DNA of 55,145 nucleotides, the filler included, from Bipalium vagum (lineage: Eukaryota): the NCBI GenBank assembly GCA_037834085.1. It is 2 parts of 2 records of this genome, joined end to end, with 100 filler letters (N's around TTAATTAATTAA, not from the genome) between each part and the next. Parts side by side here need not be neighbours in the genome. Positions count along the whole stretch, not along the records: positions 30,002 to 55,145 come from JBBMKC010196720.1; 1 more part is not named here. One strand, 5' to 3'. The position numbers and the translations under genes were made by a program. Below are positions 31,491-36,350 of this stretch, one piece after another; the stretch's first letter is position 1, and each line of letters opens with the position of its first letter. The notes under the pieces were generated by a model. That model ran no database searches. It was not told the DNA's origin and worked only from the letters and a program-made list of their open reading frames with translations.

Positions 31491-32639
31491 CAATTAAATA
31501 TATATTTTTAAATAATATTAAAATACTAATATTAAATATAGAATATTTGTTTTAATTTTTTCCCAAACTCATTTCTAGTCATAAAAAAACAGTACCATTT
31601 TTGTAAATTTAATAAAATTGATTATAAATTTTATTATTTTTTTTTATTTTCAAAAAACTTTAACCAATTATTGATAGAAAATTCATTGAAAATTAAAAAT
31701 TATTTTAGAGTATATCATTGGAAGAGAAGAAATATTTTTATGAGAAATATTATGATTATAATATTATAATTAATTATAAGTTTTAATTATAAGTCGATTT
31801 TTGTTATTTGTCGATTTTCCGTTAATTTATTAAATAATTTCAATAATTTAATAATAATAAAGAAAATAAAATCCGAAAATTTATCTGCAACATTTTTTTA
31901 GAACCGAAGAATGAAATACAAAAAAGATGTTATATCAAAAACTCAAGACTTTCCCGTCTAGTGGGCATCGGATAAAAAACGAAACTGAAAGACCAAAAAC
32001 ATTATTTTCTTCGGAAAAACTGTTAAAACTTGTACATTTATGTTTAGAAATTAAAAGATGATTTACATTTCATTTTGTGGTTTTTATAATTTAATGAAAA
32101 TTTTATTAATGAAATTGGTTTGAGAAAATTAAATTAAAAAAATAATAAATAATAACTGCATTATCAATAATTAATAATTATTTTAATTTTAGATATAATC
32201 AGGTTTGGAGAAAACTTTATCAATATTCTAAACTCCGTTGTTTTTATATGTGGAAAAAATAATTGATAAATATTTTTAATATTGAAATAAATTTTTTGCA
32301 AATGAAATAACAACTACTGACAAACGGTAATTAGTAGTATCTAATGTCATGTCTGTCCGGAGATAAGTTTTACACTTAAAGTCTGGAGCGGCAAATCGTT
32401 TGATTGTCGTCTTTTTTTTTTGAAAAGTTTTATGCCTTATTATCGGGTAACATCGTTTTCTGTGAGTTTCTGTGAATTCTGAAATTTCTTGTTGGTCCCA
32501 TTTAGAGAGATTCATTTCAATTTGTATGAATTATGGCTTACTTGACGGAGGCTGCAGCTTTTCGGACAGAAAAAGATTCTGAATTCGATGACTGTTATTT
32601 AATTTTCATTTGAAATAATTTATTGGAATTTTCATTGGA

Positions 32640-34071
32640 TTCGTTTTGCCAATCGTAAACCATCTCTGTTTCTGCCTCTTTTTTATTCTCGCTCGTTCTC
32701 TCTCTGTCTTTCTCTCTATGAAAACCGACTAAATTTCAGTTGAATATTGATTTATGTAGAACCTTCTCTCAAGGAGACAGTGACACATGTAACATAATCA
32801 ATTGGTATTTTTTGTTTTAAATGTAATTCTGTGATACCAGCTAATGTGTAAATATGTCTCAAATGATGGCCGAAACCGAATTATCATCCATATGATGTCA
32901 TTAAAACAATTTATCAACAATTGTCAAGTAAAATATGCAATTTCTTAATTTTTCATCTTTTATCAAGCGAAACTGGTGATTACGACATACTTTTCTAATC
33001 ATTTCCTGCGCCATTAGGTTGACACTTGGAAAAAAAGTATATCGGCAAAATCAATGATAATATCATGCTGTACCATAATCAATGTAAATAATAACCAGCA
33101 TTTAGTTGGGATCTTTCCAGCACAAAGGAAATTGAATTCCATGAATTATTAATGAATCGTTTGGTTTTCTCTCTTTCTCTATACCCAATCAACATTATAA
33201 TTTGAAAACAATAATGGTTAATAGTATGATTGTCATCCTATGTGAATCGCCACGTCCTACTAGTGGTCGCATTTCGTCAAAATGATCAAAAAAATTTTAC
33301 TTTGAATTTACCGAAACCGCTTGTTGAAAAATTATTGATAATAAAACCAGACGCATACAAATAATAACAACAACAATAGCAGTATAGATATATTGGCATA
33401 TATCTACAGACAAACAGAGACATACATGACGCGGTTTTTGAAAGCCAGCATTCAAGGAATGCAAACACAAGCAAACGCACACATACAAATGGACAGAGAA
33501 ACATACATTCACACGATCATGGTGATATGACAAGCTCTTTGATATGTGAAAGACCAAGAAGAAAATTGATAGGTCCACAGACACACATACACGCCATCCC
33601 GTCACCCCGCATGATCAAAGCTGTCAAGTCACAAAATAACCAAAAAATAAAAGACGCCGCCTTTTCGGCAATTTTCAAACGTTTTATTGTCGGAACCAGA
33701 AATGATTTCAACCGAACCGATTTTCTGTGACCGTATGTGTGTGTGTGAATGTCGATGTGCATGTTCGTTTGTCGACGTGTGTGATTAGGTTAGTATGAAG
33801 AAATATTTGTGGAAGAAGAACCACCATTCTCATTATATTCTTTTGATGGACCAATCGATGAGCCACATTTTCGGTTTTTTACCAATATTTCACCATTTCC
33901 CATCACAGTGTTGCATGGTGCTGTCGTGTGTGTTTGTTTGTGTTAGTGTGTGTATTGGCACATAAATACACCAAATAAATCAGCAGCTTTGAAGTTGCCG
34001 CACCAGTCAAATCGCCGTCTAGGATTTGTGGATTCCAGAAGGAATTGTTTTTCATTACTTATACCATAACG
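32640..34071 (+). promoter_or_regulatory. Putative promoter/enhancer region and first non-coding exon of the mir-10 host transcript
   Basis: No recognisable TE, relatively GC-rich, with CT, CA and GT dinucleotide tracts. TATA-like CATAAATA at 33961-33968 and a strong donor ACG|GTGAGT at 34071/34072, about 190 bp upstream of the hairpin. Confidence 0.5.
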
Positions 34072-34247
34072 GTGAGTGAATCGACTTCATAGGAAATAGT
34101 ATTAACTTCATTTTTTATTTTTCTTTAGTGCTCTTAGTCTGGTTCCACTTTTATTGATATATTTATAATAGGTTGAATTTTGTTAAACGAAAATGGATAT
34201 TTCTGTCAGTTTGTCGTTTAAGTTTCATTTTCAACCGCTTTTGTCAT

Positions 34248-34352
34248 TGTCACATATCTGAACCCTGTAGATCCGAGTTTGATGTCGTATATGGGCTTTG
34301 TGTTCTTATTCATAACGATCAAAATCGAATCTTCATGGTGAAGCTTGTGACA
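34248..34352 (+). ncRNA. mir-10: microRNA mir-10 hairpin (mature 5p ~34261-34282, star 3p ~34320-34342)
   Basis: 5p AACCCTGTAGATCCGAGTTTGA closely matches canonical miR-10 (UACCCUGUAGAUCCGAAUUUGU). The 3' arm ATCAAAATCGAATCTTCATGGT pairs with it with few mismatches. Basal stem TGTCACA/TGTGACA, basal TG at 34248-49, apical TGT at 34283-85 and CNNC (CATC) at 34358-61. Confidence 0.93.
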
Positions 34353-35829
34353 AAAGCCATCATCAAAACAATTCGGGAAATGGGTAGAATTATAAAATTT
34401 GGTAAATATTTTTTTATTTAGGGTGCTGGAAATTCACTGAGAGCGAAGAATCCATATTTTCCATGAGTAGATAGAATCTCGAGTCCAATTTTGTTCAGGT
34501 AATTTGTGATCTATTTCTACAATGTCTTTATTAATTTTTCTCTGAAATAGTCTATTACTGATTAAAACTAAAGTCAATATTGATCAGATTCAGTGATTTT
34601 TAATCGATTTACTATAATAATTTCCATGCAATAGTTTAATAATAGACAAAAATAGATAAAATTCGTTTCCTATTGATTCCTAAACAAAATAAATAATTTC
34701 TCTTTCATTATATAAATTGGGCGTCTTTGTCAAATTATTTTTTATAATGATCATTTTACAATTCTCTCTAATGATTGCCGCATTTATCACTTGAATTAAA
34801 ACGATTTTGTAAATAATCTTTTCAATGAATTTATCAATGATAAAACTATACGGGAACTGGTTATATTCCCAGTTTATTCTGTTTAATATTTTTTGTCTGG
34901 AAAAATTGCATTGCACTTATTGAATTTATGATATTTTCTAAAATTAAAACAATAATCGTTAAATTGGGTCAAGAATTTCATTGTCTCAGAAAGTGCAGAA
35001 ATGGCATTAGCTAGTTGAGTTATGAAATTAATTTCATTTAGTTCCAAAACTGGATGGATAAGAATAAAATTAGCTAAAACCAAATCTGTTGGAGAGAGGG
35101 ATAAAAGGGTAACTTGGGTTTGTTTGGTTTTCAAAAAAATATACCGTTTTCCGAACCATTAATCAAAACAAACTACTTTAGGTATTACAGTAAAACGTTA
35201 AAAATCTATAAAAGAAATTTATGAAGTTTTATTAGACTTAAATACTTTTGACTAGATCGATTAAGTACTACTGTAGTTTCCCTTTACCACTTACTTTCCT
35301 ATCAAAAGATATTGATATCTTCATTTATTTAATACATATCACCAAATTCCATTTGTAGATTTGAAAATCATAGCTGGTGAGTATATCATTAAATTGAAGA
35401 AAATCTTTGACCGAAAAACCATTCAACTTTCTATAAATAGTCTTTAGTTATTAAAATTTCTCTTTGAATTTTGCGGAATCAAAATATGAAAGAAATTGTT
35501 TCAAATTGGGGTTCCATTTCTGAAGCAGTTTCTATATTATGCCTTCTTTACTTTCTGTGGCATAATATTCCATTTTATTTTCTGCTTCTGAAGCAAATCG
35601 TCCAAGATGTCTTGAAATGCAATTCGTTTCTCAATATCACTTATTTTCACCCTTTTGGTCTCTTTTCCAATTAATGTTCAATAAAAAATACATTTAAACA
35701 AATTTTTAAAACAGCGTCACCTCTCACACGTTTACGACAGTTTTTTAAAAAATTGAAATTTACCTGAACTAAATAAGTGAAAGACAAAATTTGACAGTGC
35801 ATTATTCGAAACAAGTAAAAATTATCAGA

Positions 35830-36350
35830 ATAGAATCTTTCAAAAATTATAGGTTCTACCGGAAAAAGAGTTGTGACTCAAACTCACAGCTTGGTGATAG
35901 AAGAGTTTTATAATAAAGAGACACAATGTTCAATAAGATAAAGCTGAGCATCAAAGAATAGGTAAAAGTCATTTATTTGATTTTATTTCATATTATATTT
36001 TTCCATCGAAATGGACGACCTCGTTTTATTTTCGTCTTCATGATCTTCATTCTCCACTCGTATTTAATCTCCAAAATACTTAACAGACTCCAGAAAAATA
36101 CCGAAATAACTTTCCATAATATATATATGCCCAATATCATTTGTAAAGTGGTATAATTTTCACAAGTCTCGGTGTCGTATTGAATTTCTGTATTTCGCAG
36201 AATTCAATCTTAATCGCTGCTTCCATGAAATGTAATATTTAGAATTTATTATCTGAAAAAGTTTTTCGTTAACTTTCAAGATGTAGAGAGTTATTAACTA
36301 AACAAATAGCGGAGATGAAACGCGGTTTTTGTATGATCTATTCAGTTAGC
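35830..36350 (-). mobile_element. Highly decayed mariner N-terminal remnant
   Basis: Minus-strand ED..RGRP-like motif at ~36010-36045. Confidence 0.3.

What the first reader, a model, noticed from the sequence alone, without database searches (positions are those of the whole stretch)
34248..34361. mir-10 gene with no Hox gene visible around it
Seen: a well-formed miR-10 hairpin, the only clearly functional element in 55 kb, with no homeobox (no WFQNRR-type coding) that I could find on either strand. Established: in most bilaterians mir-10 lies inside the Hox cluster, upstream of Hox4/Dfd. Inference: this is either a mir-10 detached from a disintegrated Hox cluster, or a Hox interval greatly expanded by transposons.
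Basis: partly seen in the sequence, partly recalled or inferred. Interest (0 to 1): 0.75.

Follow-up and report, generated by a model that had tools for sequence, protein, structure and literature searches.

The report
Flatworm mir-10 gene, Hox linkage untestable
This is a real copy of the ancient microRNA gene mir-10 in what is probably a planarian flatworm genome, and finding no Hox gene in the 25 kb around it is unsurprising because planarian Hox genes are already known to be scattered.

Summary
The hairpin is real. Window 34261-34282 (+) reads AACCCTGTAGATCCGAGTTTGA. It carries the miR-10 seed and matches 20 of 22 letters of Echinococcus emu-miR-10-5p as printed in PMC8016320. It sits on the 5' arm of a stable hairpin (-31.3 kcal/mol, z -2.9, 0 of 200 shuffles as good). 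Rfam's best family is mir-10, but at only 19 bits against a gathering score of 47.5.

No homeobox is in the piece. None of 233 stop-to-stop ORFs of 38 aa or more hits a homeodomain model, and none of 6 homeodomain or hexapeptide motifs occurs. Detachment from Hox therefore cannot be judged.

Earlier notes of this scan call the genome planarian. Schmidtea Hox genes are published as unclustered (PMC4815179), so the picture is expected.

Public contigs show a second, diverged version of the locus in the source organism and in two related organisms. That suggests an old duplication. No RNA runs were available, so expression is untested. The scan also noted another miR-10-seed hairpin on other DNA of this genome (s1-734062). 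Low interest.

The parts
34261..34282 (+). Predicted mature miR-10-5p (guide strand), AACCCTGTAGATCCGAGTTTGA
   Evidence: Read. 20 of 22 letters match emu-miR-10-5p with an identical seed. Unique in the window, with 0 of 100 shuffles matching. 17 of 22 positions are paired.
34321..34342 (+). Predicted miR-10-3p (star strand), placed by 2-nt 3' overhangs on the 5p strand
   Evidence: Pair table (34262:34339 through 34282:34319). The Rfam alignment also matches the 3' arm core of the mir-10 consensus. This is inferred, with no reads behind it.
34283..34320 (+). Apical stem and loop, long for the family (the Rfam alignment shows 28 unaligned letters where the consensus has 9)
   Evidence: The only listed difference inside the hairpin among related contigs lies here: 34317 G>A (table 3; 217 further differences were not shown).
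34248..34260 (+). 5' side of the basal stem below the predicted Drosha cut (pairs with 34343-34352)
   Evidence: In the fold, 34248-34254 pairs with 34346-34352 and 34258-34259 with 34342-34343. In the longer fold the lower stem is instead 34237-34247 with 34347-34357.
34343..34357 (+). 3' side of the basal stem
34260..34352 (+). 93-nt block held by contigs of two related organisms in two versions each
   Evidence: table 8. X2 record 13 has 7 differences and 0 gaps. X2 record 14 and X4 record 22 each have 13 differences and 3 gaps.

Best explanation
Window 34237-34357 (+) is the hairpin of a genuine mir-10 gene (miR-10 proper, seed ACCCUGU) in an AT-rich flatworm genome, probably a planarian.

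Inferred mechanism, the canonical animal pathway: a Pol II primary transcript is cut by Drosha/Pasha about 13 nt above the basal junction, releasing the roughly 82-nt precursor 34261-34342. Dicer removes the long apical loop. The 5' arm (34261-34282) is loaded into Argonaute as the guide, and 34321-34342 is the star strand. The guide represses mRNAs that carry seed matches.

Shown here: the sequence identity, the hairpin, the strand and arm, low copy number, and presence in related organisms. Not shown: transcription, processing, targets.

The lack of a homeobox in the piece is real but covers only 4.3 kb upstream and 20.8 kb downstream. It fits the published scattering of planarian Hox genes and does not by itself show detachment.
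For: Sequence and seed: (20 of 22 letters, seed identical). The 3' half ...CCGAGTTTGA is shared with the tapeworm miRNA, which fits a flatworm.

Uniqueness: (1 match, 0 of 100 shuffles).

Fold: z -2.90, 0 of 200 shuffles as good; 17 of 22 paired, mean pairing probability 0.73.

Best Rfam family is mir-10 on the + strand, covering model positions 1-74 of 74 with both arms aligned.

Not a dispersed repeat or MITE: contig depth over 32288-36621 is 22-97 per bin, against 300-780 for the flanking repeats. No terminal inverted repeats bracket the hairpin.

Related organisms B and C hold the 93-nt hairpin block.

Contigs of the source run break with a 29-nt overlap at 34257-34285, which is the mature arm. 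That is expected if this exact word is shared by two loci (records 3 and 4).

No homeobox.

Hox genes unclustered in S. mediterranea: PMC4815179. miR-10 family present in flatworms including planarians: PMC3840308 and PMC5671611.
Against: Rfam RF00104 reaches only 19.0 bits (gathering 47.5), and E is 4.2 when the whole piece is searched.

No RNA run holds the stretch, so there is no expression or processing evidence.

The ortholog-like contig of organism B differs at 7 of 93 places in the hairpin block. Upstream, 89 letters differ and 68 are gapped over 1,105 places. The substitution rate over the whole block is therefore not visibly lower than in the flank, only indels are absent, and I could not see where the 7 differences fall.

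The minus strand folds about as well (-30.9 kcal/mol, z -3.73), so the fold alone does not fix the strand.

The planarian identity rests on earlier notes of this scan, the GC content (27.5%) and the flatworm-type miRNA. I made no independent taxonomic test.
Confidence: 0.85

Rival explanations
1. The mir-10 locus is truly detached: the nearest Hox gene is hundreds of kb away or on another chromosome, so the ancient mir-10/Hox4-5 linkage was lost in this lineage.
For: No homeobox within 4.3 kb upstream or 20.8 kb downstream. [quoted passage not shown] The locus seems to exist in two versions, and both can hardly have kept the original position.
Against: The piece is far too short for a genome in which another note of this scan reports a 14.9-kb intron inside a homeobox (s1-757923, unchecked). 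In tapeworms, whose Hox complement is also reduced (PMC4815179 background passage), mir-10 is still reported next to a Hox gene (PMC8016320 citing Macchiaroli 2019).
Confidence: 0.45
2. The mir-10 gene is still linked to a single Hox gene that lies just outside the piece, in an interval stretched by repeats.
For: Only 4,259 bases upstream were available. High-copy repeats flank the hairpin on both sides (table 2). There is a mariner-type remnant at 49346-50028 (Atlas clusters HTH_48/SETMAR/Mos1 at 0.92, a lead only). The tapeworm precedent applies.
Against: Nothing Hox-like, not even a hexapeptide or a partial helix 3, in 25 kb. In compact clusters the downstream Hox4 homeobox would lie within the 20.8 kb searched.
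Confidence: 0.4
3. This copy is a decaying duplicate (miRNA pseudogene), and the other version of the locus is the working gene.
For: A second, diverged version of about 33120-34364 exists in the source run (1,009-nt contig at depth 27.1). At 34317 this copy has G, while the other version and all listed contigs of organisms B and C have A.
Against: The hairpin is intact with canonical geometry. The contig break pattern indicates the mature arm is identical in both versions. Organism B holds an ortholog-like copy of this version with 0 gaps in 93 nt and collinear flanks at 32922-34352 and 34624-34847 (records 10, 11, 13).
Confidence: 0.1
4. A chance hairpin that happens to carry a miR-10-like word.
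For: The Rfam score is below threshold, with E 4.2 over the piece. AT-rich DNA forms many hairpins.
Against: A 20-of-22 match to a published flatworm miR-10-5p on the correct arm. 0 of 100 shuffles gave even a 3-mismatch match. The fold is better than all 200 shuffles. The block is held by related organisms.
Confidence: 0.02

Closest known systems
emu-miR-10 of Echinococcus multilocularis and other flatworm miR-10 genes (PMC8016320, Table 1; PMC3840308)
   Same: Same seed, 20 of 22 mature letters identical, including the flatworm-type 3' half. The mature strand is on the 5' arm.
   Different: Letters 1 and 12 differ. The tapeworm gene is reported next to a Hox gene, and here none lies within the 25-kb piece. 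I did not see the tapeworm precursor, so loop length cannot be compared.
Rfam RF00104 mir-10 precursor family (built mostly from arthropod and vertebrate genes lying in Hox clusters, as I recall)
   Same: Full-length alignment to model positions 1-74, with both arms aligned.
   Different: Apical region of 28 unaligned letters against 9 in the consensus. Several non-standard pairs at the base. 19 bits, below the 47.5 gathering score.
Schmidtea mediterranea miR-10 family entries in miRBase (a miR-10b-5p is mentioned in PMC5671611)
   Same: Same family, in what is probably the same order of animals. More than one family member per genome.
   Different: I could not see their sequences: the papers with the tables were not held and supplements are closed. 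Identity or orthology with this locus is therefore untested.

Membership tests
MIR-10 (miR-10 proper) | Seed ACCCUGU at positions 2-8 of the 5p strand | tested here: met
   34262-34268 reads ACCCTGT. This is the same as the seed of emu-miR-10-5p in PMC8016320 Table 1. That it differs from the miR-100 and miR-125 seeds is recalled, not from a call.
MIR-10 (miR-10 proper) | Similarity of the mature strand beyond the seed | tested here: met
   20 of 22 letters match emu-miR-10-5p.
MIR-10 (miR-10 proper) | Hairpin with the mature strand in the 5' arm, an imperfect duplex of about 22 nt, and room for 2-nt overhangs | tested here: met
   17 of 22 paired with single-letter mismatches only; z -2.90.
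MIR-10 (miR-10 proper) | Reaches the Rfam RF00104 gathering score (a classifier's cut-off, not a biological definition) | tested here: not met
   19.0 bits against 47.5. The long apical insertion and the divergent base of the stem cost score.
MIR-10 (miR-10 proper) | Small-RNA reads with Drosha/Dicer offsets | not testable with these tools
   None of the 5 listed runs is on record as RNA. All runs laid were contigs.
MIR-10 (miR-10 proper) | Conservation of the hairpin in related species, with arms more conserved than the loop | tested here: inconclusive
   The block 34260-34352 is present in organisms B and C, but the positions of most differences were not listed. The overall substitution rate (7 of 93) is like the flank's (89 of 1,105).
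Hox-cluster-embedded miRNA | Lies between or next to Hox4-type and Hox5-type genes | tested here: inconclusive
   No homeobox in 30002-55145, but only 4.3 kb upstream and 20.8 kb downstream were covered, and extension was impossible.

The most novel reading that the evidence does not exclude
In this planarian lineage mir-10 was duplicated together with at least 1 kb of flanking DNA before three species diverged. Both copies keep an identical mature strand, and both sit in repeat-rich, gene-poor DNA far from any Hox gene. That would be a case where the oldest miRNA-Hox linkage in animals has been lost while the miRNA itself stays under selection, implying targets and regulation independent of the Hox cluster.
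Probability: 0.3. Interest if true: 0.4.

Novelty: new member of a known kind. Interest (0 to 1): 0.2.

Why it matters
mir-10 is among the oldest animal microRNAs, and its position inside the Hox cluster is a textbook example of conserved microsynteny. A genome in which it survives away from every Hox gene would show that its function does not depend on shared Hox regulation. However, flatworms are already known to keep miR-10 (PMC3840308, PMC8016320) and planarians are already known to have scattered Hox genes (PMC4815179). Finding the gene in a 25-kb stretch without a homeobox therefore adds little until the distance to the nearest Hox gene is measured on a long assembly. The practical value is annotation: the Rfam cut-off misses this gene.

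Tried and rejected
Rfam at gathering score gave nothing. At the E-value threshold, the only other miRNA-like hit in the piece (mir-363 model, 44866-44938, 20.5 bits, E 2.1) has no mir-92-type word (the word is recalled) and folds no better than shuffles (z -0.94, 31 of 200 as good), so I rejected it. The weak hits next to the hairpin (mir-297, mir-6301, mir-1473 models, E 2-8) were treated as chance.

MITE or transposon hairpin: rejected. No terminal inverted repeats bracket it, and contig depth is low-copy.

Bacterial-type promoter and terminator scan: irrelevant to an animal genome and not used.

tRNA scan: 0 genes.

Mariner idea for ORFs 49346-50028: Pfam found nothing for them at E up to 10 apart from one unrelated weak hit. 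The Atlas gave HTH_48/SETMAR/Mos1-type clusters at 0.92. I keep this as a lead only.

Literature:
- The 22-mer in DNA letters is in 0 papers. I did not search the RNA-letter form, because that would be a changed sequence.
- 'sme-miR-10' found 1 unrelated paper.
- No listed paper or passage I opened or 49 places a planarian mir-10 relative to Hox genes.
- PMC4815179 has 0 occurrences of 'mir-10'.
- PMC11410931 has 0 occurrences of 'microRNA' or 'miRNA', and 'Hox' appears only in its reference list.
- One search was too broad and useless.
- PMC3854530 and PMC2770079 hold neither 'mir-10' nor 'Hox'.
- The passages of PMC3384580 and PMC4405270 that I saw do not place mir-10 relative to Hox genes.
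- Supplementary tables of planarian small-RNA papers (for example Table S2 of PMC5671611) and Macchiaroli et al. 2019 (not held, seen only as a citation) may hold the planarian miR-10 sequences and the tapeworm mir-10/Hox distance. I could not see them.

Earlier findings looked up by sequence returned nothing, which means nothing.

Full report
WHAT IS THERE. The piece (places 30002-55145; 25,144 bases including a 190-N gap at 47038-47227; GC 27.5%) contains a single long hairpin on the + strand at 34248-34361. As RNA it folds at -31.3 kcal/mol, against -21.8 +/- 3.3 for 200 dinucleotide shuffles (z -2.90, none as good). The 5' arm at 34261-34282 reads AACCCTGTAGATCCGAGTTTGA.

The paper PMC8016320 prints emu-miR-10-5p of the tapeworm Echinococcus multilocularis as CACCCUGUAGACCCGAGUUUGA (Table 1, passage seen). 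20 of 22 letters agree, with differences at positions 1 and 12, and the seed (positions 2-8) is identical. The 22-mer is unique in the window even at 3 mismatches, and 0 of 100 shuffles produced any match.

In a 137-nt fold, 17 of the 22 positions are paired and are interrupted only by single-letter mismatches. Below the duplex lie 9 pairs within 13 letters (34248-34260 with 34343-34352). As I recall, this fits the roughly one helical turn that Drosha measures from the basal junction. A CNNC word at 34358-34361 starts 16 letters after the predicted cut. That motif and its usual position are also recalled, and I give them little weight.

WHAT SPEAKS AGAINST. Rfam reports nothing at gathering score in the piece. 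With permissive filters its best family for the hairpin is mir-10 (RF00104), aligned over model positions 1-74 with both arms. The score is only 19.0 bits against a cut-off of 47.5, with E 0.13 in 801 nt and E 4.2 over the whole piece. The alignment shows why: 28 unaligned letters in the apical region where the consensus has 9, and non-standard pairs at the base. The minus strand folds about as well (-30.9 kcal/mol, z -3.73, 1 of 200). The strand is therefore fixed by the miR-10 word, not by the fold. No expression data exist: none of the 5 listed public runs is on record as RNA.

COMPARATIVE EVIDENCE FROM PUBLIC CONTIGS (my single read-laying run, 5,901 letters at 80% likeness).
- Run X1 (share of words 0.96) carries contigs identical to the window (records 1, 3, 4, 8, with 0 differences). 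It is presumably the source organism or even the source data, so it is not independent.
- Its contigs break with a 29-letter overlap at 34257-34285, exactly over the mature arm.
- A further X1 contig (1,009 letters, depth 27.1 against 17.7-25 for the identical ones) aligns to 33196-33361 with 17 differences and 9 gap letters. It skips 33361>33650 and 33683>33963, and still covers 34317, where it reads A for G.
- Together these show a second, diverged version of roughly 33120-34364 that shares the mature word exactly.
- Organisms B (X2) and C (X4) hold collinear contigs over 32922-34026 (89 and 73 differences; 68 and 72 gap letters) and over 34021-34285.
- They hold the 93-letter block 34260-34352 in two versions. 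B has one with 7 differences and 0 gaps (record 13, which continues collinearly at 34624-34847) and one with 13 differences and 3 gaps (record 14). In C only the second is listed (record 22).
- The two versions thus seem older than the split of these organisms, so I read them as paralogs rather than alleles. Old haplotypes are not excluded.
- The comparison does not prove selection on the hairpin. 7 of 93 substitutions is no lower than the upstream 89 of 1,105, only indels are absent, and the table listed just one difference inside the hairpin (34317, apical region), with 217 rows not shown.
- Depth per bin over 32288-36621 is 22-97 in X1, against 300-780 at 31500-31893, 32091-32287, 36622-36818 and 37016-37400. 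The hairpin sits in low-copy DNA between dispersed repeats.
- No inverted repeats bracket it.

THE HOX QUESTION. Six-frame translation of the piece gave 111 stop-to-stop ORFs of 50 aa or more and no WFxNxR-type word. I then took all 233 ORFs of 38 aa or more that contain no X and scanned each against Pfam through two alignments. All matched families were listed (24 and 20). None is a homeodomain. The best E-value is 0.00068 (HTH_micro, one ORF), and everything else is at 0.015 or worse. Six regular expressions for homeodomain helix 3, the N-terminal arm, the LELEKEF region and the hexapeptide found 0 matches. So the piece holds no recognisable homeobox.

The limits of this test are as follows. 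A homeobox split into parts shorter than 38 aa would be missed. More important, the hairpin lies only 4,259 bases from the 5' end of the piece and 20,803 from the 3' end.

WHOSE GENOME. Organism names were coded. Several follow-up notes of this scan on other pieces of the same genome conclude that it is a planarian flatworm. I did not test that independently. It agrees with the low GC content. It also agrees with the 3' half of the miRNA (…CCGAGTTTGA), which is shared with the tapeworm sequence printed. That other phyla differ there is recalled.

One soil-metagenome run holds a 151-letter contig with a single difference at 33956-34106 (record 28).

WHAT IS KNOWN.
- Currie et al. 2016 (PMC4815179; abstract and passages seen) report 13 Hox genes in Schmidtea mediterranea that are not clustered. 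[quoted passage not shown] The paper never mentions mir-10 (0 occurrences).
- Fromm et al. 2013 (PMC3840308; passages) found the miR-10 family kept in flatworms, with three hairpins in Gyrodactylus.
- PMC5671611 (passages) mentions a miR-10b-5p among 257 known S. mediterranea mature miRNAs in miRBase.
- PMC8016320 (passage) states that in tapeworms one neighbour of mir-10 is a Hox gene, citing Macchiaroli et al. 2019, which I did not see.
- The planarian comparative-genome paper PMC11410931 holds no 'microRNA' or 'miRNA' and mentions Hox only in its references.
- In some searches, no listed paper or passage I opened gives the position of a planarian mir-10 relative to Hox genes. The library lacks most subscription papers, and supplements were closed.

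VERDICT. In detail: a well-formed mir-10 gene with no homeobox in its 25-kb piece. The gene is an ordinary ortholog of a very well-known family, missed by the Rfam cut-off because of a long apical loop. In a planarian the absence of a Hox gene within 4-21 kb is what the published scattering of Hox genes and the large, repeat-rich intergenic DNA predict, and it cannot separate 'detached' from 'stretched interval'.

I put about 0.85 on a functional mir-10 gene, about 0.1 on a decaying duplicate and about 0.02 on chance. On location I put about 0.45 on true detachment and 0.4 on a Hox gene not far outside the piece.

Interest is low (0.2). It would rise to moderate if a long assembly showed both copies far from every Hox gene.

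Noticed in passing
window about 33120-34364 (second version, not in the piece): The source run holds a second, diverged version of the mir-10 locus with about 1 kb of upstream DNA (1,009-nt contig; skips at 33361>33650 and 33683>33963; A for G at 34317). Organisms B and C also show two versions of the hairpin block. This looks like an old segmental duplication of mir-10.
   Followed up: partly
window 34072-34128: A consensus-like splice donor (GTGAGT at 34072-34077) and a polypyrimidine tract plus AG acceptor (34110-34128) would bound a 57-nt mini-intron 130-190 nt upstream of the hairpin. This may belong to a spliced primary transcript, as note s1-753399 proposes. There are no RNA data.
   Followed up: no
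window 31500-31893, 32091-32287, 36622-36818, 37016-37400: Contig depth of 300-780 in the source run against about 25 nearby marks dispersed high-copy repeats on both sides of the hairpin. They are also very deep in organism B (up to 5,900) (table 2).
   Followed up: no
window 33956-34106: A soil-metagenome run (X5) holds a 151-letter contig with 1 difference and another over 33841-33980 with 5 differences. DNA of this animal or a very close relative was therefore present in that sample (records 27 and 28).
   Followed up: no
window 49346-50028 (+): Three overlapping frames look like a frame-shifted mariner-type transposase remnant. Pfam finds nothing for them. The ESM Atlas puts the first ORF nearest to HTH_48/SETMAR/Mos1 clusters at 0.92, which is a lead only.
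   Followed up: partly
window 33467-33772: CA-rich and GT-rich low-complexity blocks form imperfect inverted repeats (arms 33485-33514 and 33743-33772, 70% complementary). This raises GC to 0.37 in 33002-34001. The stretch lies inside the upstream region shared with organisms B and C.
   Followed up: no
window 41797-41827 (-): Sub-threshold Rfam match to CRISPR-DR41 (28.2 bits against gathering 36, E 0.047). It is meaningless in an animal genome and probably chance.
   Followed up: no
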